A stretch of DNA of 64,000 nt, from positions 14,198,001-14,262,000 of the forward strand of contig NC_047030.1 of assembly GCF_902652985.1 (NCBI RefSeq), written 5' to 3'. The translations under genes were made by a program, and so were the position numbers. This DNA comes from Pecten maximus. Its lineage: Eukaryota. The notes under the pieces are model-generated. The model was not told where the DNA came from, searched no databases, and saw only the letters and a program-made list of their open reading frames with translations. Shown here piece after piece: positions 13,801 through 30,780 of the stretch (positions are counted from its first letter, which is position 1; the number at the start of each line of letters is the position of its first letter).

Positions 13801-13990
13801 ATAGAGGTTACACAACGAGTGGTTGTTGGATATGGAATTTATTTCACATGAGTAAGTTATTTTTTAAAAGTTGCAAAAGACACGAGCTTTAGCGAGTGTT
13901 TTTTGCAACTTTTAAAAAATAACTTACGAGTGTGAAATAAATTCCATATCCAACAATTTCGAGTCGTGTGACCTATTTCTACCACAATAA
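13801..13990 (+). mobile_element. Long terminal hairpin of a non-autonomous Crypton-like element (fragment)
   Basis: ~80-bp inverted arms (13801-13976) around ACGAGCTTTAGCGAGT, the same loop architecture as the hairpin of the recombinase-encoding element at 20481-20630. Confidence 0.6.
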
Positions 13991-14594: not shown

Positions 14595-17529
14595 AAATGT
14601 TTTCAATGAGATCAAAATTGCTGCCATCGTTCACAAATTTGTCTCCCGTTTAACTTGTTTAAAATTTCTCTTTTATCACCCAGAGTATGATAACTCTGTC
14701 AACCCCTAGGGTATGATAACTCTGTCAACCCCTAGGGTGTGATAACTCTGTCAACCCCTAGGGTCTGATAACTCTGTCAACCCCTAGGGTCTGATATCTC
14801 TGTCAACCCCTAGGGTATGATATCTCTGTCAACCCCAAGGGTATGATAACTCTGTCAACCCCTAGGGTGTGATATCTCTGACAACCCCTAGGGTATGATA
14901 ACTCTGTCAACCCCTAGGGTATGATAACCCTGTCAATCCCTACGATATGATATATCTGTCAACCCCTAGGGTATGATAACTCTGTCAACCCCTAGGGTAT
15001 GATATCTCTGTCAACCCCTAGGGTATGATAACTCTGTCAACCCCAAGGGTATGATAACTCTGTCAACCCCTAGGGTATGATAACTCTGTCAACCCCTAGG
15101 GTATGATAACTCTGTCAACCCCAAGGGTATGATAACTCTGTCAACCCCTAGGGTATGATAACTCTGTCAACCCCTAGGGTATGATAACTCTGTCAACCCC
15201 TAGGGTATGATAACTCTGTCAACCCCTAGGGTATGATTTCTCTGTCAACCCCAAGGGTATGATAACTCTGTCAACCCCTAGGGTATGATAACTCTGTCAA
15301 CCCCTAGGGTATGATACCTCTGTCAACCCCAAGGGTATGATAACTCTGTCAACCCCTAGGTTATGATTTCTCTGTCAACCCCTAGGGTGTGATTTCTCTG
15401 TCAACCCCTAGGGTATGATATCTCTGTCAACCCCTAGGGTATGATAACTCTGTCAACCCCTAGGGTATGATACCTCTGTCAACCCCAAGGGTATGATAAC
15501 TCTGTCAACCCCTAGGGTATGATATCTCTGTCAACCCCTAGGGTATGATAACTCTGTCAACCCCAAGGGTATGATAACTCTGTCAACCCCTAGGGTATGA
15601 TAACTCTGTCAACCCCTAGGGTATGATAACTCTGTCAACCCCAAGGGTATGATAACTCTGTCAACCCCTAGGGTATGATAACTCTGTCAACCCCTAGGGT
15701 ATGATAACTCTGTCAACCCCTAGGGTATGATAACTCTGTCAACCCCTAGGGTATGATTTCTCTGTCAACCCCAAGGGTATGATAACTCTGTCAACCCCTA
15801 GGGTATGATAACTCTGTCAACCCCTAGGGTATGATACCTCTGTCAACCCCAAGGGTATGATAACTCTGTCAACCCCTAGGTTATGATTTCTCTGTCAACC
15901 CCTAGGGTGTGATTTCTCTGTCAACCCCTAGGGTATGATATCTCTGTCAACCCCTAGGGTATGATAACTCTGTCAACCCCTAGGGTATGATACCTCTGTC
16001 AACCCCAAGGGTATGATAACTCTGTCAACCCCTAGGGTATGATAACTCTGTCAATCCCTACGATATGATAACTCTGTCAACCCCTAGGGTATGATTTCTC
16101 TGTCAACCCCTAGGGTATGATAACTCTGTCAACCCCTAGGGTATGATTTCTCTGTCAACCCCTAGGGTATGATAACTCTGTCAATCCCTACGATATGATA
16201 ACTCTGTCAACCCCTAGGGTATGATTTCTCTGTCAACCCCTAGGTTATGATTTCTCTGTCAACCCCTAGGGTATGATAACTCTGTCAACCCCTAGGGTAT
16301 GATAACTCTGTCAACCCCTAGGGTCTGATATCTCTGTCAACCCCTAGGGTATGATAACTCTGGCAACCCCTAGGGTATGATAACTCTGTCAATCCCTACG
16401 ATATGATAACTCTGTCAACCCCTAGGGTATGATTTCTCTGTCAACCCCTAGGTTATGATTTCTCTGTCAACCCCTAGGGTATGATAACTCTGTCAACCCC
16501 TAGGGTATGATAACTCTGTCAACCCCTAGGGTATGATAACTCTGTCAACCCCTAGGGTCTGATATCTCTGTCAACCCCTAGGTTATGATTTCTCTGTCAA
16601 CCCCTAGGTTATGATTTCTCTGTCAACCCCTAGGGTATGATATCTCTGTCAACCCCTAGGGTATGATAACTCTGTCAACCCCTAGGGTCTGATATCTCTG
16701 TCAACCCCTAGGTTATGATTTCTCTGTCAACCCCTAGGTTATGATTTCTCTGTCAACCCCTAGGGTATGATATCTCTGTCAACCCCTAGGGTATGATATC
16801 TCTGTCAACCCCTAGGGTGTGATATCTCTGTCAACCCCTAGGGTATGATTTCTCTGTCAACCCCTAGGGTATGATATCTCTGTCAACCCCTAGGGTGTGA
16901 TATCTCTGTCAACCCCTAGGGTATGATATCTCTGTCAATCCCTACGGACTGATATATCTGACAACCCTCTAGGGTGTGATATCTCTGTCAACCCCTAATG
17001 TATGATGTATCTGTCAACCACTAGGGTATGATATCTCTGTCAAACCCTAATGTATGATGTATCTATCAACCCCTAGGGTATGATGTATCTGTTAACCCCT
17101 AGGGTATGATATCTCTGTCACCCCCTAGGATATGATATCTCTGTCAACCCCTGGGGTATGATATCTCTGTCAGCCCCAAGGGTGTGGTGTCTCGATCAAC
17201 CCCTAGGATGTGATATCTCTGTCACCCTCTAGGGTGTGATATATCAGTCAACCCCTGGCGTATGATATATCTGTCAATCCCTACGTAATGATATATCTGT
17301 CAACCCCTAGAGTGTGGTGTCTCTGTCAATCCCTATGGTATGATATCTCTGTCAACCACAAGGGTATGGTATCTCTGTCAGCCCCTAGGGTATGATATCT
17401 CTTTCAGCCCCTAGGGTGTGATATCTCTGTCAATCCCTATGGTATGATATTTCTATCAACCCCTAGGGTATGATATCTCTGTCACCCTCTAGGGTGTGAT
17501 TTCTCTGTCAAGCCCTAGCGTATGATATA

Positions 17530-19278
17530 CGATGGGTGTTTCATAAATAATGTCATCTGTGCTTTATTTCGCGGAAATCGTGCAATTTATGCACAAAACC
17601 ACCTCGTGTCGATTGAGTGATCACTGGCTCGTGACACAGGTAAATATCTCGCCCACACGTTCACTGGCCTCGGTACAGTGTACATCGTTCCATAGCCTAT
17701 TCGTTAGACTAGACACAAAATTACAGGAAAACGAGCTGAAAATGTTCTTGAAATTAGGGCCTATATAAAAGGTAGGTCATTACTCGGCATAAAGGCTGTA
17801 GATATTCACCGCGAGGTGTGTGACATTTATGGGGAGGGCCAAATGTCTCACAGGTCTGTTTGTAGGTGGGTAGGTAAATTTAGTGCTGGGCAGCAGCAAC
17901 TGAAAGATGCTGTTCACCCAGGTCGTCCTGCAACAACTACGACCAAATGTAACATAGAAAAAATCCGAAATATCCTCAAAACTGATGCTCGATTCACCGT
18001 AAGACAATTGGCCCGAATGACAAACTTGTCGTTAGCAAGAGTTCATGCAATTTTGAAGAAACACCTAAAAGCTAGAAAGATAAATGCAAGATGGATACCC
18101 CATTTGTTAACGGATGAGCAAAAGAAGACGCGTGTAACAATGGCAAAAAAAACTTCTCAAAATGTACCCAAAATATAGTAAAAAGGCTTTTGATAATATA
18201 GTCACTGGTGATGAGACCTGGGTGTAATATTTTGAACCAAAACGGAAGGTTGCCAACCGAATATGGGCCACTAAAAATGCCAGACGCCCAAGTATTGCCA
18301 AACGAATACGAACGGTAAAGAAGGTTTTGTATGTTTTTTTTTTCACTAATAAGGGTCCAGCTATTCAAATCCCGGTGCCAAAAGGCAGAACGGTCACAGG
18401 CAAGTTCTATAAAAAAAGGTTGTTCTGAGAAACTTGTCGTTAGCAAGAGTTCATGCAATTTTGAAGAAACACCTAAAAGCTAGAAAGATAAATGCAAGAT
18501 GGATACCCCATTTGTTAACGGATGAGCAAAAGAAGACGCGTGTAACAATGGCAAAAAAACTTCTCAAAATGTACCCAAAATATAGTAAAAAGGCTTTTGA
18601 TAATATAGTCACTGGTGATGAGACCTGGGTGTAATATTTTGAACCAAAACGGAAGGTTGCCAACCGAATATGGGCCACTAAAAATGCCAGACGCCCAAGT
18701 ATTGCCAAACGAATACGAACGGTAAAGAAGGTTTTGTATGGTTTTTTTTTCACTAATAAGGGTCCAGCTATTCAAATCCCGGTGCCAAAAGGCAGAACGG
18801 TCACAGGCAAGTTCTATAAAAAAAGGTTGTTCTGAGAAAGTTGAAGAACTACTACAAAAGTCGCCGCCCCAAAACAGGACTTAAGTATGTCCGACTTTTG
18901 CATGATAATGAACCCGCTCACAAGGCACGTTTTGCGACTGACTTTTTGGAGTCGGAGAAGGTTACCGTCCTTCCGCACCCTCGATATTCGCCAGACTTGG
19001 CCCCCTCTGACTATTTTCTCATTCCAAACCTTAAATATCATTTATCTGGAAGGAGATACAATTCGAGAAATGCCCTTGGATCTGCTGTTTATCAGTGTCT
19101 GATGGTTGTACCCATTGAAGAGTATGAAAAATGCTTCCAAAAATGGATTGACCGGCTAAAAAGGTATGTTCTGGCTGGCGGAGAGTATTTTGAAGGGCAG
19201 AGCAAATTAAAATGAACAAAAGCACTTCCGCTATATGAGCACCGATGCAAGTGACATTATTTTTTGGAACACCCCTCG
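17530..19278 (+). mobile_element. Mariner (DD34D) DNA transposon, full-length but inactive, with an internal ~408-bp tandem duplication
   Basis: TA TSD at 17528-17529 and 19279-19280. TIRs CGATGGGTGTTTCATAAATAATGTCA / rc CGAGGGGTGTTCCAAAAAATAATGTCA. The empty site rebuilds a GATATATCTGTC satellite unit. Length without the duplication is about 1.34 kb. Confidence 0.95.
17720..19215 (+). pseudogene. Mariner transposase pseudogene
   Basis: HTH region, WIPHLL, TGDETW, HDNEP and YSPDLAPSDY motifs. Likely start codon mutated (ATT at 17720). Premature TAA after DETWV in both duplicate copies, plus frameshifts. Confidence 0.93.
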
Positions 19279-20474
19279 TATCTGTCAATCCCTACGGAAT
19301 GATATATCTGTCAACCCCTAGGGTATGATTTCTCTGTCAACACCTAGGAAATTATATCTCTGTCAGCCCTTAGGGTATGATATCTCTGTCAGTCCCTAGG
19401 GTGTGGTGTCTCTGTCAACCCCTATGGTATGATATATCTGTCAACCCCAAGGGTATGATATATCTGTCAGCCCCTAGGGTATGATATATCTGTCAACCCC
19501 TAGGGTATGGTCTCTCTGTCAACCCCTAGTGTATGATATCTCTGTCAACCCCTAGGGTGTGGTCTCTCTGTCCATCCCTATGGTATGCAATCTCTGTCAA
19601 CCCTAGGGTGTGATATATCTGTCAACCCCTATGGCATGGTATCTCTGTCAACCCCTAGGGTATGATTTCTCTGTCAACCCCTAGGGTATGATTTCTCTGT
19701 CAACCCCTAGGGTATGATTTCTCTGTCAACCCCGATGGTATGATATATCTGTCAACCCCTATGGTATGATATATCTGTCAATCCCTAGGGTGTGATATCT
19801 CTGTCAACCCCTAGGGTATGATATTTCTGTCAACCCCTAGGGTATGCTTTCTCTGTCAGCCCCTAGGGTGTGGTGTCTCTGTCAACCCCTATGGTATGAT
19901 ATCTCTGTCAACCCCTATCATATGATATATCTGTCAACCCCTAGGGTGTGATATTTCTGTCAACCCCTAGGGTGTGATATTTCTGTCAACCCCCTAGGGT
20001 ATGATTTCTCTGTCACCCCTAGGGTATGATAACTCTGTCAACCCCTAGGATGTGATAACTCTGTCAACCCCTATATGGTGTGATATCTCTGTCAACCCCT
20101 ATCGTATGATATTTCTGTCAACCCCTAGGATGTGATATCTCTGTCAACCCCTAGGATGTGATATTTCTGTCAACCCCTACCGTATGATATATCTGTCAAC
20201 CCCTATGGTGTGATATCTCTGTCAACCCCTATCGTATGATATTTCTGCCAACCCCTAGGGTGTGATATCTCTGTCAACCCCTAGCGTATGATATATCTGT
20301 CAACCCCTAGGGTATGATGTCTCTGTCAACCCCTAGGATGTGATATCTCTGTCAACCCCTAGCGTATGATATATCTGTCAACCCCTAGGGTATGATATCT
20401 CTGGCAATCCCTAGCGTATGATATATATGTCAACCCCTAGGGTGTGGTGTCTCTGTCAAACCCTAGGGTGTGAT

Positions 20475-22923
20475 TAATAGAATCTATCGCTAGTTAGTGT
20501 GTGGGATAGAGAAATCTCAACCACGAAGGTTTAGTTTTTGTCCAGGACGAGGCTTGCCGAGTCCTGGACTAAAAATCTAAACCTGAGTGGTTGAGATTTC
20601 TCTATCCCACACACTAACTAGCGATTGATTATTTTTCTCACACTTGTGACAGAGTTTATATTGCATAAATTAGTATTTCCTGTAGCAATTAAACCATTTT
20701 AGATGTTGGCGCAGTAATACGTTCAGCACTACTTCCACTTCCTGTCTGTCGGTCAACTTCCTGTTGTCTGTCTGTCAACTTCCTGTTGTCTGTCTTCTGC
20801 TTCAGTTCATCATATTGTATTCTGAAATGGAAAAAAACATTTAAGATTGGTGATTATGTGACTGTTGGTGCAGGTGGTAAGAAAGGAAAAATTGTAAACA
20901 CTGAAAAACCCTTGGGTACATACACCATGTACAAAATACAACTGTTAGATGGTGGAAATATTGTAAGTGCTGCCAGGCATGAACTGGTTAAAGGAATGCC
21001 CATGGATGAATTCGATTTTGGTCAAATATTTGGAGAGGAACTTGCAGACAAGTATGATCACTCTCTACTTCATGATATATTTGATACACCTACTCACACA
21101 GATAATGGTCATGCACAAATACAATCTGAGAATTCTGCGGCTACAGGTTCATCCCTACCCCCAGATCCTTCATTTCCAAATTCTGCCAAAACTGGTCAAG
21201 ATTCCACTTCTAGATTTGTTCCTATTGATGATGGTGATGTGGAGAAATTTTTGAATGAAAATAAAAATAAAAACACAGCAAGAAAAACATTGAGCCATAT
21301 AAAACTGTTGAAAACATTTCTGGAATCCAAAAATGAGGTTAGAGAACCCCAAAACATACCGCCTGAACAGCTTAATGAATATCTGTGTCAATTCATCATC
21401 TCTGTCAGACAAAAAGATGGTAAGGAGTATCAGCCGTCAGTATTGCGAGGAATGATTGGTTCTTTTGACCGCCATTTGAAACGACACAAGTATGAGTGTA
21501 ACATAATTGGAGGGTTTCCTTTTTCTAAGACAAGGGATGCGTTGAAATCTAAGCAAAAGGACCTAAAAAAACAAGGGCTTGGAAATAAACCTAAAGCAGC
21601 TGACCCAATCACTCAAAAAGACATTGAACAATTTTACAGTGCTGGTCAACTTGGAAATGACACACCCTCTAGTTTAATCAATACCCTTTGGCTGAATAAC
21701 ACTTTGCATTTTGGCATGAGAGGTGGTGCTGAAGAGCACAGAGCCATGCGTTGGGGCGACTTGGAGCTTAAATACGATCACAATTTGGGCTTAGAATATT
21801 TAACACATAACGAGAGACAGACAAAAACCAGAACCGGTGCTGACCTTACCAATATTCGTTATTCAAACCCAAAAATGTATGAACTACCCGACAAAAAAGA
21901 CCGCTGTCCAGTCACGACTTACAAAAAATTCTCGGACAAACGACCAGCTGGTTTCAGTCAACCACATCATCCATTTTATTTAGCTGTGGTTACACATGTG
22001 GCCAATCCAACTGATGAGGAGAAATGGTTTTTAAGTGGACCTATTGGTGTAAACAAACTGAGATCTCTGATGTCAACAATGATAAAAAAATCAAACATGA
22101 ATGACGAAGGCAAACGACTTACCAACACTAGCGCCAGAAAACATCTCTGTCAACTTCTGCTGGACAACAACGTGCCCGACACACTGGCTGTGCATTGGAC
22201 CGGCCATAAAAACCCAAACTCGCTGAACAATTACAGAACTGTGTCTTCAGAAACTCAGTTGCATGTCTCGAACATGTTGTGTGGAATTACTCGCCCTTGC
22301 TTACCGAATGAACGGATATCCGGTCTCCAGTCGTCGACGCAGTCAAGCACAACGAAACACACTGTAAACACTAGTACTTCCAGCACGCTGAGATCTGTTT
22401 TTGACGGTGCCACGATTCACGGGGGCACTTTTAACGTTCATATTCATAACCATAGCCAAAAACGCCCAGCAAAACGAAGGAGACCAGCTTTAGTCTTCAG
22501 TGATAGCGATGACGACTTCCAGTGACCTATACATTGGTACATTGTATTTATTCTAACCACAGGGGCCGGTGATTCTAACCTTAACGTTAAGCTAATATTA
22601 GCGTGTTTCGGAGTACACAGACTGACGTTTTCGCTTAAATTAATTTACCGGAAGAATTTCAATGTGTATATTGATGAAAATAAAATTCATTGTATTTATT
22701 CAAAATTTTCTTTTTATGTTATTTGATTCCATGCAATTTATTTAAAATAACAGTTGAAAAAAAAACGAACTATATTTTTTTGAGGAAGAAAAAAATCCTT
22801 CGATTTCAAGAGATTGCTGCGGTTGCATTGTGACGTCATAGCACGAGCTGTCCCACCCTAGGTTGGGACAGGAATATCCCCAACTAGTAAAACTACGGGA
22901 AAACTCTGTCACAAGTGTGAGAA
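20475..22923 (+). mobile_element. Crypton (tyrosine-recombinase DNA transposon), apparently full length, no TSD
   Basis: 5' hairpin 20481-20630 (loop ACGAGGCTTGCCGAGT). Perfect 24-bp inverted repeat at 20634-20657 / 22901-22924. Single YR ORF, AATAAA at 22679, subterminal palindrome at 22848-22871. The flanks rejoin as GGGTGTGAT^ATCTCTGTC, an intact satellite unit. Confidence 0.9.
20786..22525 (+). CDS. Crypton tyrosine recombinase (DUF3504 / ZMYM-KCTD1-QRICH1-related family), intronless
   Basis: 579-aa ORF. Core-binding region NTARKT...LCQFIISVRQKDGKEYQPSVLR. Catalytic motifs FGMRGG (R), ERQTKTRTG (K), RCPV, TNTSARK (HxxR position) and TGHKNPNSLNNY (H, Y). C-terminal basic NLS-like and acidic tail. 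The probable true ATG (20827) is 1 nt out of frame across an A7 run. Confidence 0.92.
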   Translation: MSVFCFSSSYCILKWKKTFKIGDYVTVGAGGKKGKIVNTEKPLGTYTMYKIQLLDGGNIVSAARHELVKGMPMDEFDFGQIFGEELADKYDHSLLHDIFDTPTHTDNGHAQIQSENSAATGSSLPPDPSFPNSAKTGQDSTSRFVPIDDGDVEKFLNENKNKNTARKTLSHIKLLKTFLESKNEVREPQNIPPEQLNEYLCQFIISVRQKDGKEYQPSVLRGMIGSFDRHLKRHKYECNIIGGFPFSKTRDALKSKQKDLKKQGLGNKPKAADPITQKDIEQFYSAGQLGNDTPSSLINTLWLNNTLHFGMRGGAEEHRAMRWGDLELKYDHNLGLEYLTHNERQTKTRTGADLTNIRYSNPKMYELPDKKDRCPVTTYKKFSDKRPAGFSQPHHPFYLAVVTHVANPTDEEKWFLSGPIGVNKLRSLMSTMIKKSNMNDEGKRLTNTSARKHLCQLLLDNNVPDTLAVHWTGHKNPNSLNNYRTVSSETQLHVSNMLCGITRPCLPNERISGLQSSTQSSTTKHTVNTSTSSTLRSVFDGATIHGGTFNVHIHNHSQKRPAKRRRPALVFSDSDDDFQ

Positions 22924-25900
22924 ATCTCTGTCAACCCCTAGGGTGTGGTCTCTCTGTCAATCCCTATGGTATGGTATCTCTGTCAACCCCTAGGGTGTGA
23001 TATATCTTTCAACCCCTATGGTGTGGTCTCTCTGTCAATCCCTATGGTATGATATATCTGTCAACCCCAAGGTTATGATTTCTCTGTCAACCCCTATGGT
23101 ATTATATCTCTGTCAATCCCTATGGCATGATTTCTCTGTCAACACCTAGGGTGTGATATCTATGTCAACCGCTATGGTATGATACCTCTGTCAACCCCTA
23201 GGTTATGATATCTCTGTCAACCCCTATGGTATGATACCTCTGTCAACCCCAAGGGTATGATTAATCTGTCAACCCCTAGGGTGTGATACCTCTGTCAATC
23301 CCTACGGAATGATATCTCTGTCAACCCCTATGGTATGATATCTCTGTCAATCCCTATGGTATGATTTATCTGTCAACCCCTAGCGTATGCTATCTCTGTC
23401 AACCCCTAGGGTATGATATCTCTGTCAACCCCTAGGGTGTGATACCTCTGTCAATCCCTACGGAATGATTTATCTGTCAACCCCTAGCGTATGCTATCTC
23501 TGTCAACCCCTAGGGTATGATATCTCTGTCAACCCCTAGGGTGTGATACCTCTGTCAATCCCTACGGAATGATATCTCTGTCAACCCCTAGGGTATGATT
23601 TATCTGTCAACCCCTAGGGTATGATTTATCTGTCAACCCCTATGGTGTGATATCTCTGTCAATCCCTACGGAATGATATCTCTGTCAACCCCTAGGGTAT
23701 GATTTATCTGTCAACCCCTAGGGTATGATTTATCTGTTAACCCCTAGGGTGTGATACCTCTGTCAATCCCTACGGAATGATATCTCTGTCAACCCCTAGG
23801 GTATGATTTATCTGTCACTTCCTAGGGTGTGGTCTCTCTGTCAATCCCTAGGGTAGGATTTCTCTGTCAACCCCTAGGGTGTGGTCTCTCTGTCAACCCC
23901 TATGGTATGATACCTCTGTCAACCCCTAGGGTGTGGTATCTCTGTCAACCCCTATGGTATGATACCTCTGTCAATCCCTAGGGTGTGATACCTCTGTCAA
24001 CCCCTATGGTATTATACCTCTGTCAACCCCTAGGGTGTGATATATCTGTCAACCCCTAGGGTGTGATACCTCTGTCAACCCCTAGGGTGTGATAACTCTG
24101 TCAATCCCTATGGTATGATATCTCTGTCAATCCCTACGATATGATATATCTGTCAACCCCTAGGGTGTGATATCTCTGTCGACCCCTAGGGTGTGATATC
24201 TCTGTCGACCCCTAGGGTGTGATATCTCTGTCAACCCCTAGGGTGTGATATTTCTGTCAAACCCTAGGGTGTGATATCTCTGTCAACCCCTAGGGTGTGA
24301 TATCTCTGTCGACCCCTAGGGAATGATATTTCTGTTAACCCCTAGGGTATGATTTCTTTGTCAACCCTCTAAGGTGTGATTTCTCTGTCAACCCCTAGGG
24401 TGTGATATATCTGTCAACCTCTAGGTAATGATATCTCTTTCAGCCCCTAGGGTGTGATATCTCTGTCAACCCCTAGGGTATGATATCTCTATCAACCCCT
24501 AGGGTATGATACCTTTGACAACCCCTAGGGTGTGATATTTTTGTCAATCCCTAGGGTATGATATTTCTGTCAACCCCTAGGGTGTGATATCTCTGTCAAC
24601 CCCTAGGGTATGATACCTTTGACAACCCCTAGGGTGTGATATTTCTGTCAACCCCTAGGGTGTGATATATCTGTCAATCCCTACGGAATGATATCTCTGT
24701 CAACCCCTATGGTATGATATCTCTGTCAATCCCTATGGTATGATTTATCTGTCAACCCCTAGCGTATGATATCTCTGTCAACCCCTAGGGTATGATATCT
24801 CTGTCAACCCCTAGGGTGTGGTACCTCTGTCAATCCCTACGGAATGATATCTCTGTCAACCCCTAGGGTGTGATATTTCTGTCAACCCCTAGGGTGTGAT
24901 ATTTCTGTCAACCCCCTAGGGTATGATTTCTCTGTCACCCCTAGGGTATGATAACTCTGTCAACCCCTAGGATGTGATAACTCTGTCAACCCCTATATGG
25001 TGTGATATCTCTGTCAACCCCTAGGGTATGATTTATCTGTCAACCCCTATGGTGTGATATCTCTGTCAATCCCTACGGAATGATATCTCTGTCAACCCCT
25101 AGGGTATGATTTATCTGTCAACCCCTAGGGTATGATTTATCTGTTAACCCCTAGCGTATGATATCTCTGTCAACCCCTATCGTATGATATATCTGTCAAC
25201 CCTTAGGGTGTGATATTTCTGTCAACCCCTAGGGTGTGATATTTCTGTCAACCCCTAGGGTATGATTTCTCTGTCACCCCTAGGGTATGATAACTCTGTC
25301 AACCCCTAGGATGTGATAACTCTGTCAACCCCTATCGTATGATATATCTGTCAACCCCTATGGTGTGATATCTCTGTCAACCCCTATCGTATGATATTTC
25401 TGTTAACCCCTAGGGTGTGATATCTCTGTCAACCCCTAGCGTATGATATATCTGTCAACCCCTAGGGTGTGATATCTCTGTGAATCCCTAGGGTATGATA
25501 TCTCTGGCAACCCCTAGCGTATGATATATCTGTCAACCCCTAGGGTGTGGTCTCTCTGTCAAACCCTAGGGTGTGATATCTCTGTCAACCCCTAGGGTGT
25601 GGTCTCTCTGTCAATCCCTATGGTATGATATATCTGTCAACCCCAAGGTTATGATTTCTCTGTCAACCCCTATGGTATTATATCTCTGTCAATCCCTATG
25701 GTATGATTTCTCTGTCAACCCCTAGGGTGTGATATCTATGTCAACCGCTATGGTATGATACCTCTGTCAACCCCTAGGGTATGATATCTCTGTCAACCCC
25801 TATGGTATGATACCTCTGTCAACCCCAAGGGTATGATTAATCTGTCAACCCCTAGGGTGTGATACCTCTGTCAATCCCTACGGAATGATATCTCTGTCAA

Positions 25901-28900
25901 TCCCTATGGTATGATTTATCTGTCAACCCCTAGCGTATGATATCTCTGTCAACCCCTAGGGTATGATATCTCTGTCAACCCCTAGGGTGTGATATCTCTG
26001 TCACCCCCTAGGGTGTGATACCTCTGTCAATCCCTACGGAATGATATCTCTGTCAACCCCTAGGGTATGATTTATCTGTCAACCCCTAGGGTATGATTTA
26101 TCTGTCAACCCCTAGGGTATGATTTATCTGTCAACCCCTAGGGTGTGATACCTCTGTCAATCCCTACGGAATGATATCTCTGTCAACTCCTAGGGTATGA
26201 TTTATCTGTCACCTCCTAGGGTGTGGTCTCTCTGTCAATTCCTAGGGTATGATTTCTTTGTCAACCCCTAGGGTGTGGTCTCTCTGTCAACCCCTATGGT
26301 ATGATACCTCTGTCAACCCCTAGGGTGTGCTATCTCTGCCAACCCCTAGGGTGTGATACCTCTGTCAACCCCTATGGTATGATACCTCTGTCAACCCGTA
26401 GGGTGTGATATATCTGTCAACCCCTAGGGTGTGATACCTCTGTCAACCCTTAGGGTGTGATAACTCTGTCAATCCCTATGGAATGATATCTGTGTCAATC
26501 CCTACGATATGATATATCTGTCAACCCCTAGGGTGTGATATCTCTGTCGACCCCTAGGGTGTGATATCTCTGTCGACCCCTAGGGTGTGATATCTCTGTC
26601 AACCCCTAGGGTGTGATATCTCTGTCGACCCCTAGGGAATGATATTTCTGTTAACCCCTAGGGTATGATTTCTTTGTCAACCCTCTAAGGTGTGATTTCT
26701 CTGTCAACCCCTAGGGTGTGATATATCTGTCAACCTCTAGGTAATGATATCTCTTTCAGCCCCTAGGGTGTGATATCTCTGTCAACCCCTAGGGTATGAT
26801 ATCTCTGTCAGCCCCTAGGGAATGATATCTCTGTCAACCCCTAGGGTGTGATATCTCTGTCAACCCCTAGGGTGTGATATCTCTGTCAACCCCTAGCGTA
26901 TGATATATCTGTCAACCCCTATGGTGTGATATCTCTGTCAACCCCTATCGTATGATATTTCTGTTAACCCCTAGGGTGTGATATCTCTGTCAACCCCTAG
27001 CGTATGATATCTCTGTCAATCCCTAGGGTATGATATCTCTGGCAACCCCTAGCGTATGATATATCTGTCAACCCCTAGGGTGTGGTGTCTCTGTCAAACC
27101 CTAGGGTGTGATATCTCTGTTAACCCCTAGGGTGTGGTCTCTCTGTCAATCCCTATGGTATGATATTTCTGTCAACCCCTAGGGTGTGATATATCTTTCA
27201 ACCCCTACGGTGTGGTCTCTCTGTCAATCCCTATGGTATGATATATCTGTCAACCCCAAGGTTATAATTTCTCTGTCAACCCCTATGGTATTATATCTCT
27301 GACAATCCCTATGGTATGATTTCTCTGTCAACCCCTAGGGTGTGATATCTATGTCTACCGCTAGGGTATGATACCTCGGTCAACCCCTCGGGTATGATAC
27401 CTCTGTCAACCCCAAGGGTATGATTAATCTGACAACCCCTAGGGTGTGATACCTCTGTCAATCCCTCCGGAATGATATCTCTGTCAACCCCTATGGTATG
27501 ATACCTCTGTCAATCCCTATGGTATGATTTATCTGTCAACCCCTAGCGTATGATATCTCTGTCAACCCCTAGGGTATGATATCTCTGTCAACCCCTAGGG
27601 TGTGATATCTCTGTCACCCCCTAGGGTGTGATACCTCTGTCAATCCCTACGGAATGATATCTCTGTCAACCCCTAGGGTATGATTTATCTGTCAACCCCT
27701 AGGGTATGATTTATCTGTCAACCCCTAGGGTGTGATAACTCTGTCAATCCCTATGGTATGATATCTCTGTCAATCCCTACGATATGATATATCTGTCAAC
27801 CCCTAGGGTGTGATATCTCTGTTCACCCCTAGGGTGTGATATCTCTGTCAACCCCTAGGGTGTGATATTTCTGTCAAACCCTAGGGTGTGATATCTCTGT
27901 CAACCCCTAGGGTGTGATATCTCTGTCCATCCCTAGGGAATGATATTTCTGTTAACCCCTAGGGTATGATTTCTTTGTCAACCCTCTAAGGTTTGATTTC
28001 TCTGTCAACCCCTAGGGTGTGATATATCTGTCAACCTCTAGGTAATGATATCTCTTTCAGCCCCTAGGGTGTGATATCTCTGTCAACCCCTAGGGTATGA
28101 TATCTCTATCAACCCCTAGGGTATGATACCTTTGACAACCCCTAGGGTGTGATATTTTTGTCAACCCCTAGGGTATGATATTTCTGTCAACCCCTAGGGT
28201 GTGATATCTCTGTCAACCCCTAGGGTATGATACCTTTGACAACCCCTAGGGTGTGATATTTCTGTCAACCCCTAGGGTGTGATATATCTGTCAACCCCTA
28301 GGGTATGATATCTCTGTCAGCCCCTAGGGAATGATATCTCTGTCAACCCCTAGGGTATGATATCTCTGTCAACCCCTAGGGTGTGATAACCTGTCAACCC
28401 CTAGGGAATGATATCTCTGTCAGCCCCTTGGGTATGATATCTCTTTCAGCCCCTAGGGTGTGATATCTCGGTCAATCCCTATGGTATGATATCTCTATCA
28501 ACCCGCAGGGTATGATATATCTGTCAACCCCTAGGTTGTGATATCTCTGTCAACCACTAGGTTGTGATATCTCTGTCAGCCCCCAGGGTGTGATATCTCT
28601 GTCAACCCCTAGGGTGTGATATCTCTGTCAATCCCTAGGGTGTGATATCTCTAACAATCCCTATGGTATGATATCTCTGTCAGCCCCTAGGGTGTGTGTC
28701 TCTGTCAATTCCTAAGGAATGATATCTCTGTCAACTACCAGGGTATGACAGGTCGCACGTAAAGTCAGCATTTTATTGCATTTCTTTGGATCATACGTAA
28801 AAATATGATAGGAGAAAAATAGTCACCTCTACCTTCGGGACAAAGAGACAGCTCAAGCCCTCGGGGTTTTAAACGTGATTGTCTAACCCTCAGCAGAGAT

Positions 28901-29203
28901 TCAGGTTAGACAACCAAGAATATCACCCTAGGTTTGAAGATTTCTTGATCACACCCTAAATGATGGAGACGATCGAGGAATATGTCACAGTTTTATGTTT
29001 TATTCCATGTCGATGTAGCGTTACACTGACATTGACATTGACTGAACTATCTTTTTCAATTTTGAACGTATGCATCATGAATCACTAAGTAACTTATCCT
29101 GAACGTATTTATAACAAATGTAACTTATACAAACTTAAAGTTTATTTCTAATATAGTCTATTTGAAAAACTACTGAACATTTTTTCTAATTTAATCTACG
29201 GTA

Positions 29204-30269: not shown

Positions 30270-30445
30270 AATCTAGACATATCCATACCTCATGTATGCT
30301 GGAACAGTCCGTAGTTTTCCGTAACATTCTGGCCAAAATTTCGAATCGAAAGGATTTCACTGACGAATTCGATTCATTTTGGTCAGAATGTTACGGAAAA
30401 CTACGGACTGTTCCAGCATACATGAGGTAAGGATAGGTCTAGATT
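30270..30445. mobile_element. Fold-back / MITE-like near-perfect inverted repeat
   Basis: ~70-bp arms (AATCTAGACATATCCATACCTCATGTATGCTGGAACAGTCCGTAGTTTTCCGTAACATTCTGGCCAAAAT and its near-exact reverse complement) with a short loop. Confidence 0.75.
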
Positions 30446-30780
30446 TTGTAGAGACGGCTGCCATCTCTATTATGTTTGAAGCAAATACTTTGTAGAGACG
30501 GCCGAAATGTCTTTTATGTTTGAAGTATATACTTTGTAGAGACGGCCGAAATGTCTTTTATGTTTGAAGCATATACTTTGTAGAGACGGCTGCCATCTCT
30601 TTTGCGTTTGAAGGTTATACTTTGTAGAGGGGACCACCATGTCTTTTATGCTTGAATATATATTTTGTAGAGATGACCACCACCTCTCTTATGTCTGAAG
30701 CATATTCCTTGTAGAAACGTCTGCCATCTCTTTTGTGTTTGAAGCACATACTTTGTAGAGACGGCTACCATCTCTTTTCA
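30446..30780. repeat. 44-bp minisatellite, about 8 copies
   Basis: GAGACGG recurs at 30451, 30495 and 30539. Unit approximately TACTTTGTAGAGACGGCYGMMATSTCTTTTATGTTTGAAGCATA. Confidence 0.85.

What the first reader, a model, noticed from the sequence alone, without database searches (positions are those of the whole stretch)
20461..22945. Near-intact Crypton inserted cleanly, with no TSD, into an array resembling its own ends; empty sites are in the same window
Seen: junctions AAACCCTAGGGTGTGAT|TAATAG... and ...GTGTGAGAA|ATCTCTGTC. The same higher-order context occurs uninterrupted at 25561-25590 and 27096-27120, which fixes the breakpoint at GAT^ATC with nothing duplicated or lost. It also suggests the insertion postdates the block duplications. 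The target GTGTGAT mimics the element's right end GTGTGAG. Inference: the satellite may act as a landing pad for sequence-selective integration, a self-made safe harbour for this recombinase family.
Basis: partly seen in the sequence, partly recalled or inferred. Interest (0 to 1): 0.82.

Follow-up and report, generated by a model that had tools for sequence, protein, structure and literature searches.

The report
Scallop Crypton inserted in Crypton-derived satellite
A young tyrosine-recombinase (Crypton) jumping gene of the king scallop sits cleanly, with nothing duplicated, inside a 26-base satellite that is itself built from the end-sequence these elements prefer as a target. This shows sequence-selective integration, but not that the satellite is a regular landing pad.

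Summary
Window 20475-22923 is a 2,449-bp CryptonA-type element inserted at GAT^ATC in a 26-bp satellite. The joined flanks match two uninterrupted paralogous blocks without a gap, so there is no target duplication and no loss.

The element has one open frame for a Cre-like tyrosine recombinase. It starts with a 159-bp palindrome followed by a 24-bp inverted copy of its own right end.

Seven other family copies lie outside the satellite. Their left flanks still mimic the element's right end (GTGAGA[A/T]; 52/96 matches in register, P<5e-6). This is the published Crypton model of circle plus pseudo-site recombination.

New points:
- The satellite monomer is homologous, in register at the crossover, to a subterminal site of a sibling non-autonomous family (CCCTAGGGTGAGAT^).
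- That site is occupied by clean Crypton insertions in about 72 of 605 copies.
- A 53-bp satellite has monomer borders at the same crossover points.

So sequence-selective integration is supported. "Landing pad / self-made safe harbour" is not. This is the only such insertion in about 3,260 monomers genome-wide, an occupancy roughly 400 times lower than at the authentic site.

The scan had already noted hairpin-ended Cryptons elsewhere in this genome.

The parts
20475..22923 (+). Whole Crypton-type element (2,449 bp), from TAATAGAATC... to ...GTGTGAGAA
   Evidence: Four other full-length copies at 97-99% identity begin and end at these same bases. A fifth copy (L008+L006) is split by an insertion, and L007 is cut off by a contig end. 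Flanks diverge immediately outside.
20475..20633 (.). 159-bp terminal palindrome (hairpin-forming left end)
   Evidence: 72-nt arms, 89% complementary. As single-stranded DNA it folds at -69.7 kcal/mol (+ strand) and -68.4 kcal/mol (- strand), z about -20. It is present at the start of every full-length copy.
20634..20657 (+). Inner 24-bp inverted repeat, the reverse complement of the element's right terminus
   Evidence: pair I2: 100% complementary to 22901-22924.
22901..22923 (+). Right-terminal copy of the inverted repeat (...CTCTGTCACAAGTGTGAGAA). This is the arm that target sites mimic.
20743..20795 (+). 22-bp tandem repeat (x2.4) containing the CTGTCAAC core shared with the satellite
   Evidence: 9-nt identical core, P about 0.016.
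20693..22525 (+). Open frame of 610 codons encoding the recombinase. The ATG at 20827 is followed by A-run 20831-20837, which puts it out of frame in this assembly copy. Stop codon at 22523-22525.
21263..22234 (+). Recombinase domains and active-site codons. QRICH1-like N-domain 21263-21547; DUF3504 21626-22084. Codons: R 21719-21721, K 21824-21826, T (in place of His) 22127-22129, R 22136-22138, H 22205-22207, Y 22232-22234.
   Evidence: Pfam; PDB QRICH1; alignment of 11 paralogues; AF2 model and Foldseek hits to Cre, XerA, Tn1549 Int and lambda Int.
22848..22871 (.). Small subterminal palindrome CTGTCCCACCCTAGG/TTGGGACAG that resembles the satellite monomer
   Evidence: I3; 16/21 matches, P about 0.01.
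19281..20474 (+). 26-bp satellite, left flank of the insertion
22924..28748 (+). 26-bp satellite, right flank. It contains the two paralogous empty sites (25577|25578 and 27112|27113). Its last monomer ends ...GGGTATGAC, in register with the crossover position.
14685..17527 (+). First block of the same satellite, separated from the next block by a mariner insertion
28810..28975 (.). Degenerate Crypton-type palindrome (GGAGAAAAATAGTCA...) about 65 bp beyond the array's right edge
   Evidence: Read. By eye it resembles the inner palindrome junction of family B shown. One search detects only its core arms, 28864-28928.

Best explanation
Window 20475-22923 is a young copy of a low-copy CryptonA-type DNA transposon of the king scallop. 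Its single gene encodes a two-domain, Cre-like tyrosine recombinase.

Inferred mechanism. The element's joined ends (...GTGTGAGAA/TAATAGAATC...), presumably on an excised circle, recombine conservatively with a chromosomal pseudo-site. The left half of that pseudo-site resembles the element's right end (GTGAGA[A/T]). Nothing is duplicated or lost.

In this copy the pseudo-site is one monomer of a 26-bp satellite. The satellite is homologous to Crypton right-end sequence, most closely to the subterminal site CCCTAGGGTGAGAT^ of a sibling non-autonomous family. That site is the preferred integration point of this element group. The resemblance between target and element end is therefore by descent, and the insertion follows the family's ordinary target rule.

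The satellite is an occasional pseudo-site, not a habitual harbour.

Shown: anatomy, clean insertion, copy ends, flank bias, hot-spot occupancy, fold.
Inferred: circle intermediate, which recombinase acts, direction of satellite origin.
For: - Element ends and clean insertion.
- Recombinase: DUF3504 1.9e-20 and a weaker QRICH1-domain hit at 4.4e-5, below Pfam's cut-off. PDB QRICH1 at 2.7e-4. Foldseek finds Cre at 5e-7 with TM about 0.5 over about 345 columns, plus XerA, Tn1549 Int, IntI and lambda Int.
- Active site: R164, K199, R303 and Y335 are invariant or nearly so, and H326 is nearly invariant, among 11 in-genome paralogues.
- Flank bias: left flanks of 8 independent family copies match the last 12 nt of the element at 52/96 positions. 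Without the window copy it is 44/84. Both give P<5e-6. The window target scores 8/12.
- Wider group: 100 flanks of sibling left ends, sampled without regard to their sequence, show GA[T/C/A] before TAATAG in about 78% (tallied by eye).
- Satellite homology: the satellite monomer matches sibling right-end sequence, in register at the crossover, at 14-18 of 26 positions (P 1e-3 to 1e-5).
- Hot spot: the subterminal site is unoccupied 533 times and occupied about 72 times. In four cases both junctions were read and the rejoined flanks restore the empty site exactly.
- Recent activity: copies are 97-99% alike. Another animal's contigs show flanks absent from the assembly.
- Published model: Crypton ends resemble their targets and excision is clean (PMC9977147, PMC3212892).
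Against: - No circle or head-to-tail junction of this family was found in the assembly or in contigs of four runs. That is a weak test, because contigs drop rare forms.
- The His of the canonical R-H-R-Y tetrad is Thr in this family.
- No copy has a proven intact start-to-stop frame in the assembly.
- Three of the eight flanks match the right end poorly (3-4 of 12).
- The right half of the satellite target does not resemble the element's left end.
Confidence: 0.8

Rival explanations
1. Landing pad / self-made safe harbour. The satellite is a preferred and possibly selected integration target that these Cryptons generate and then reuse.
For: - The satellite makes up only about 9e-5 of the assembly (2,171 monomers within 2 mismatches, 246 of them in this window). 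Yet it holds 1 of 8 family copies (P about 7e-4, post hoc).
- The insertion is in the one register and orientation, out of 52, that is homologous to the sibling crossover.
- The homologous site in sibling elements is a true hot spot.
- Arrays with monomer borders at crossover points exist (53-bp array).
- An earlier scan note reports another Crypton copy in a satellite (s1-789125, not tested here).
Against: - There is only one such insertion in about 3,260 monomers genome-wide, in either orientation.
- About 7 kb of other arrays carry none.
- None of about 556 sibling left ends lies in the satellite. Taken over the whole group, one hit is barely above chance (expected about 0.05).
- Occupancy is about 0.03%, against about 12% at the authentic site.
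- Seven of eight family copies lie in ordinary AT-rich DNA.
- The case was noticed because it lies in a satellite (ascertainment).
Confidence: 0.12
2. Pure chance. The element lands anywhere, the satellite is a neutral target, and the GTGTGA resemblance is coincidence.
For: Cryptons tolerate many sites. Three of the eight flanks match the right end poorly. The family's own right end matches the monomer only 12/26 (P 0.014).
Against: Flank bias without the window copy has P<5e-6. About 78% of sibling flanks read GA[T/C/A]. Register and orientation within the monomer are correct (1 in 52). The hot spot is at the homologous site.
Confidence: 0.06
3. Artefact. The element was placed in the satellite by mis-assembly of repeats.
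For: The assembly is PacBio CLR-based (PMC7191990). Contigs of two other animals (X1, X5) show no bridge across these junctions.
Against: X2 short-read contigs bridge both junctions (20445-20504 with no differences; 20833-22953). The junctions are base-exact relative to two paralogous blocks. The window copy also has its own private substitutions.
Confidence: 0.03

Closest known systems
CryptonA elements of animals (Kojima & Jurka 2011, PMC3212892)
   Same: A single gene for a DUF3504-type tyrosine recombinase, no reverse transcriptase, no target-site duplication, no terminal inverted or long direct repeats at the two tips, and multicopy with non-autonomous derivatives.
   Different: That paper found no terminal repeats of any kind in animal Cryptons. 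Here the left end is a 159-bp palindrome followed by a perfect 24-bp inverted copy of the right end, and a defined target rule is visible. The tetrad His is Thr.
CryptonF-1_cRei of Chlamydomonas (PMC9977147) and the Goodwin 2003 model
   Same: One terminus (there CACCG) nearly matches the target (CAYCG), and insertion and excision are clean. Here the right end ...GTGAGAA matches targets ...GTGAGA[A/T].
   Different: It belongs to a different Crypton group, with a different motif and no hairpin end reported. Activity is observed directly there and only inferred here.
Tn916/Tn1549-type tyrosine-recombinase transposons (established knowledge; Tn1549 Int structures are among the fold hits)
   Same: A circular intermediate, tolerance of heterology at the crossover, and loose targets that resemble the joined ends.
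   Different: These are bacterial conjugative elements with an accessory Xis and coupling sequences carried over between sites. No carried-over bases are seen here.
DIRS-type elements with an internal complementary region (established knowledge)
   Same: An internal stretch is complementary to the joined termini.
   Different: DIRS elements are retrotransposons with RT/RNase H. This element has only the recombinase.
Transposon-derived satellites (general phenomenon; bivalve examples recalled from memory, not tested)
   Same: Tandem arrays are built from a transposon's terminal or subterminal sequence, and arrays are scattered on many chromosomes.
   Different: Here the monomer borders coincide with the recombinase crossover positions (26-bp and 53-bp arrays), which hints that the recombination sites themselves take part in array formation.

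Membership tests
Crypton (tyrosine-recombinase DNA transposon) | Encodes a tyrosine recombinase and no reverse transcriptase or DDE transposase | tested here: met
   There is one long frame only. Pfam finds DUF3504, QRICH1 and a weak Phage_integrase hit. The fold matches Cre, Xer and lambda Int.
Crypton (tyrosine-recombinase DNA transposon) | Complete catalytic tetrad R-H-R-Y | tested here: inconclusive
   R164, R303 and Y335 are present and conserved, as are K199 and H326. The tetrad His position is Thr here and in two close paralogues, His in four and Gln in four. Positions were assigned by motif, not by a residue-level structural superposition.
Crypton (tyrosine-recombinase DNA transposon) | No target-site duplication; conservative insertion | tested here: met
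   Two paralogous empty sites in the window. In four nested insertions of sibling elements the rejoined flanks restore the empty site.
Crypton (tyrosine-recombinase DNA transposon) | Target resembles one terminus (microhomology model) | tested here: met
   52/96 matches in register, P<5e-6.
Crypton (tyrosine-recombinase DNA transposon) | Extrachromosomal circular intermediate | tested here: inconclusive
   No joined-end sequence of this family was found in the assembly or in contigs of four runs. Contigs cannot show rare molecules.
CryptonA group | Recombinase of the DUF3504 type without a C-terminal GCR1_C domain; animal host | tested here: met
   DUF3504 at 1.9e-20 and no other domain. The host is identified as Pecten maximus by exact assembly statistics. 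No phylogeny was made.
Domesticated DUF3504 host gene (QRICH1/ZMYM/KCTD1-like) | Single-copy conserved gene lacking the catalytic Tyr and second Arg | tested here: not met
   It is multicopy with identical ends and the other copies carry frameshifts. Tyr and both Arg are retained.
TIR/DDE cut-and-paste transposon | Inverted repeats at both tips plus a target-site duplication | tested here: not met
   The tips TAATAG... and ...GAGAA are not inverted repeats of each other, and there is no duplication. The mariner in the same array shows both features.

The most novel reading that the evidence does not exclude
The recombination sites of this Crypton group both make and reuse tandem arrays. Recombination between two att-like sites in direct order near the right end would amplify the stretch between them. 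The stretch would be 53 bp between the subterminal site GAGAT^ and the terminus GAGAA^, and about 26 bp in the progenitor of this satellite. The resulting arrays have every monomer border at a half-site where sibling elements can integrate. This would be a recombinase-driven origin of satellite DNA in an animal, with the arrays as secondary integration targets.
Probability: 0.25. Interest if true: 0.8.

Novelty: new variant of a known kind. Interest (0 to 1): 0.55.

Why it matters
Animal Cryptons are poorly understood. The reference survey found no recognisable ends, and nothing was known about their target choice.

This locus gives base-exact ends together with empty sites in the same window. 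With its relatives it also gives:
- a target rule (GTGAGA[A/T]^);
- an authentic hot spot inside sibling elements, occupied in about one copy in eight;
- satellites whose monomer borders fall on the crossover points.

That makes three things directly testable:
- how an animal Crypton recombinase recognises DNA;
- whether it is a usable sequence-selective integrase;
- whether site-specific recombination can seed satellite DNA.

The specific claim of a self-made safe harbour does not hold on present numbers.

Tried and rejected
Small fetches were used instead.
- A consensus built with a fixed 26-bp step failed because the register drifts. Real monomers next to the empty sites were used instead.
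- Head-to-tail junctions of this family: none within 2 mismatches in the assembly. No 'go back' joint 22923->20475 in contigs of X1, X2, X5 or X10.
- Other Crypton insertions in the satellite, in either orientation: only the window copy. The near-miss loci L074-L082, L086 and L087 are not in the satellite. Arrays L051-L053 and L083-L085 are uninterrupted.
- Palindrome as a separate foldback element that landed at the same spot: rejected. Every full-length copy starts with it and the flanks diverge just before it.
- The many 70%-identical 173-bp hits as short hairpin-only elements: they are the ends of a larger sibling family, B.
- Two autonomous relatives (L088, L089) lack the TAATAGAATC end in the span fetched. 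They carry a palindrome of about 160 bp 3' of the gene. The shared end motif is therefore not universal.
- NCBIfam gave nothing.
- Strand asymmetry of the hairpin: none in folding energy.
- The big protein search was not used, because the family scans settled the family.
Full report
**Where this is**

The window is C16:14198001-14262000 of a 918,306,378-bp assembly in 3,983 scaffolds. These figures, and the scaffold lengths 60,076,705, 44,824,366 and 32,483,354, are exactly those published for the king scallop Pecten maximus (PMC7191990). That assembly is PacBio CLR-based and lacks about a fifth of the estimated genome. Both points matter below, for homopolymer errors and for under-represented satellites.

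**The observation**

The sequence reads ...GGGTGTGAT|TAATAGAATC... at 20474|20475 and ...GTGTGAGAA|ATCTCTGTC... at 22923|22924. The insert is 2,449 bp, and taking it out restores the 26-bp period of the surrounding satellite.

I joined 130 bp from each side and slid the 260-mer along the arrays without gaps.
- It fits at 26983-27242 with 8 mismatches.
- It fits at 25448-25707 with 21 mismatches.
- Every other register gives 30-36 mismatches.

Both places read GTGTGAT^ATCTCTG. The bases on either side of each junction differ between element and flank, so the breakpoint cannot be moved. Nothing was duplicated or lost.

Short-read contigs of run X2 bridge both junctions.

**What the insert is**

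Four other full-length copies (97-99% identical) start and stop at the same bases. There is also a copy split by another insertion, a truncated copy and a short derivative.

Parts of the element:
- a 159-bp palindrome at the left tip (20475-20633), which folds as DNA at about -69 kcal/mol on either strand;
- directly after it, a 24-bp stretch (20634-20657) that is the perfect reverse complement of the right terminus (22901-22923);
- a 22-bp tandem repeat (20743-20795);
- one long open frame (20693-22525);
- a small subterminal palindrome (22848-22871).

If the ends were joined, the right terminus, the palindrome and the inner repeat would form one palindrome of about 207 bp, with the junction at one foot.

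**The protein**

- Pfam: DUF3504 at 1.9e-20, the QRICH1 N-domain at 4.4e-5 (below Pfam's cut-off), and a weak phage-integrase hit.
- Solved structures: QRICH1 at 2.7e-4.
- An AlphaFold model built on 11 in-genome paralogues has mean pLDDT 74. It is matched by QRICH1 (1.5e-8) and by Cre over both domains (5e-7, TM about 0.5), then by XerA, Tn1549 integrase, IntI and lambda Int.
- In the alignment of paralogues (38-58% identity), Arg164, Lys199, Arg303 and Tyr335 are invariant or nearly so, and His326 is nearly invariant.
- The His of the classical HxxR motif is Thr in this family, His in four paralogues and Gln in four.
- The genome holds at least 122 recombinase matches, many with open frames of 480-583 codons.

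This is a CryptonA-type element. It is not a domesticated DUF3504 gene, because it is multicopy, has defined ends, and its other copies are frameshifted.

**Near-intact**

The window copy has the only frame open from end to end. Its ATG (20827) is out of frame because the following A-run has 7 A. Copies L002 and L005 have 6 A, in frame; L003 and L004 have 8.

All contigs laid there show 6 A. One of them, from X2, also carries the window-private C at 20614. The extra A may therefore be an assembly error, but contigs cannot prove linkage.

**Signs of recent activity**

- The copies are very similar to one another.
- Contigs of another animal (X1) carry flanks that are absent from the assembly (...CACAAGAA|TAATAG and GAGAA|TCATTTG).
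- A low-depth RNA-library contig set comes from a copy 1.2% different from this one.

**Target choice of the family**

Only the window copy is in the satellite. The 12 bases left of eight independent copies nevertheless match the last 12 bases of the element (CAAGTGTGAGAA) at 52 of 96 positions. Without the window copy the figure is 44 of 84. No set out of 200,000 random draws reached either value. G at -3 and A at -2 are almost fixed. The satellite target scores 8/12, like the others.

Three right flanks begin AATA(T/G), like the element's left end shifted by one base.

This is the published Crypton model. The terminus resembles the target, and insertion and excision are clean (PMC9977147). 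Short end/target similarity is taken as the recombination substrate (PMC3212892).

**The wider element group**

The left-end motif TAATAGAATC plus a palindrome also heads other families.
- Family B, 20 loci: flanks are GAT or GAC in 17 of 20.
- A short non-autonomous family, D.
- One hundred flanks sampled without regard to their sequence show GA[T/C/A] in about 78% (tallied by eye).

Family D has its true right end at ...CAGGGTAAGAGAA^. Fifty-three bp upstream of that end it has a small hairpin site, CCCTAGGGTGAGAT^AAGAAAATCTCACC.
- That subterminal site occurs unoccupied 533 times.
- About 72 times a Crypton left end is inserted exactly at ^.
- For four cases I read both junctions. The inserts are about 400-540 bp (two candidate right junctions were listed at two of the loci), and the rejoined flanks rebuild the empty site with nothing added or lost.
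- For three further loci, the coordinates place both junctions 250-500 bp apart.

Sequence-selective, duplication-free integration by this element group is thus well shown. Its favourite target is a piece of a sibling element.

**The satellite**

The monomer to the left of the insertion (GTCTCTGTCAAACCCTAGGGTGTGAT) matches the 26 bases before ^ in family-D-type copies at 14-18 positions, ungapped and in register (P 1e-3 to 1e-5). The last 14 positions match at 13. The match to family A's own right end is weaker (12/26, P 0.014).

Links between the satellite, similar arrays and Crypton sequence at other loci:
- the satellite abuts a 52-bp tandem repeat of a Crypton palindrome arm;
- one array starts 45 bp from a Crypton-type palindrome;
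- other arrays replace or adjoin Crypton ends (L057, L061, L081).

In the window, the array's last monomer ends at the crossover register, and a decayed palindrome lies 65 bp beyond it.

A separate 53-bp satellite consists of exactly the stretch between the subterminal site and the terminus of family D. Its monomer borders read GAGA[A/T]^AAGAAAATC.

The resemblance between the array and the element's ends is therefore real and due to common descent. The crossover positions coincide with monomer borders. I infer, but have not shown, that recombination between nearby att-like sites helps to build such arrays.

**Is the satellite a landing pad?**

For:
- The satellite is about 3,260 monomers, or 85 kb, or 9e-5 of the assembly. 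This comes from 2,171 monomers within 2 mismatches genome-wide, 246 of the window's 369 monomers meeting the same criterion.
- One of eight family copies in it gives P about 7e-4.
- The insertion uses the one register and orientation, out of 52, that corresponds to the sibling crossover.

Against:
- The case was picked because it is in a satellite.
- It is the only Crypton end in this satellite in the whole assembly, in either orientation.
- About 7 kb of other arrays are uninterrupted.
- None of about 556 sibling ends lies in it.
- Occupancy is about 0.03% per monomer, against about 12% at the authentic site.

The monomer differs from that site by one base in the left arm (T for A) and lacks its right arm. 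I conclude that a monomer is a usable pseudo-site, which explains this insertion. The array is not a habitual or selected harbour on present evidence.

The assembly under-represents satellites, so absolute numbers are soft.

**Timing**

The insertion is absent from two paralogous blocks, the closer of them 97% identical over 260 bp. That fits insertion after the block duplications. Clean excision is known for Cryptons, so secondary loss cannot be ruled out.

**Relation to earlier notes of this scan**

After my own analysis I looked up earlier notes. Hairpin-ended Cryptons, the internal complement of the joined ends, and nested pairs had already been noted on other DNA of this genome. My results agree with them.

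A note on this window reads the satellite as an amplified subterminal palindrome of a Crypton. I find the best match to the subterminal site of the sibling family D.

One note reports another defective Crypton in a satellite. I did not test it.

Noticed in passing
window 17529-19279: A mariner-type element with about 28-bp inverted ends (TACGATGGGTGTTTCATAAATAATGTCA...) and a TA duplication sits in the same satellite. Inside it a 407-bp stretch is duplicated (18018-18843).
   Followed up: partly
window 20831-20837: The A-run reads 7 A in the assembly but 6 A on every short-read contig laid there. One of those, from X2, carries the window-private C at 20614. This may be a homopolymer error that hides an intact start codon.
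   Followed up: partly
G000 C10:18182851-18183034, C19:3554372-3555711, C16:35427447-35428690, C2:53899844-53900239: Arrays with a 53-bp period made of the right-terminal stretch of the short Crypton family D. The monomer borders lie at the two att-like crossover positions.
   Followed up: partly
L093, L094, L095, L056+L092: Nested, duplication-free insertions of short Crypton-type elements (about 400-540 bp) lie exactly at CCCTAGGGTGAGAT^AAGAAAATC of sibling elements. About 72 of 605 such sites are occupied.
   Followed up: yes
L053 (C1:27795000-27798500), minus strand 1640-1200: The 26-bp satellite passes directly into a tandem repeat of about 52 bp built from a Crypton palindrome arm (GAGATTTCTCTATCACACCCTCAAGGTAGG...).
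   Followed up: partly
L081 (C1:17505470-17505730) and L061 (C2:13659700-13660520): Other Crypton left ends abut different satellites of 25-27 bp whose last monomer ends in GTGTGAT or GGGTAAGAT. These are further cases of arrays at Crypton ends.
   Followed up: no
L086 (C2:39748700-39749330): In a family-B-like copy the centre of the palindrome has been tandemly amplified about four times (unit about 37 bp).
   Followed up: no
Read laying, runs X1 and X10 on window 20300-23100: Flanks not present in the assembly (...CACAAGAA|TAATAG; GAGAA|TCATTTGTC; GAGAA..|ACGTATGTG) point to insertion polymorphism among animals. An RNA-library contig reads out of the element's right end.
   Followed up: no
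alignment A1, column of residue 300 (window 22127-22129): The His of the HxxR motif is Thr, His or Gln in different scallop Crypton families, all of which have long open frames. The classical tetrad may not be strict in this group.
   Followed up: partly
window 30270-30778: A 176-bp palindrome (70-nt arms, 96% complementary) is followed directly by a 44-bp tandem repeat (x7.6). This is another palindrome-plus-array unit, of unknown family.
   Followed up: no
window 13805-13974: A 170-bp near-perfect palindrome (84-nt arms) lies upstream of the satellite. It has no Crypton end motif.
   Followed up: no
L088 (C18:24628900-24632700) and L089 (C13:15669300-15673200): Two autonomous relatives with open frames of 495 and 583 codons carry their palindrome of about 160 bp 3' of the gene. 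This is the circular permutation of the layout seen in the window copy.
   Followed up: partly
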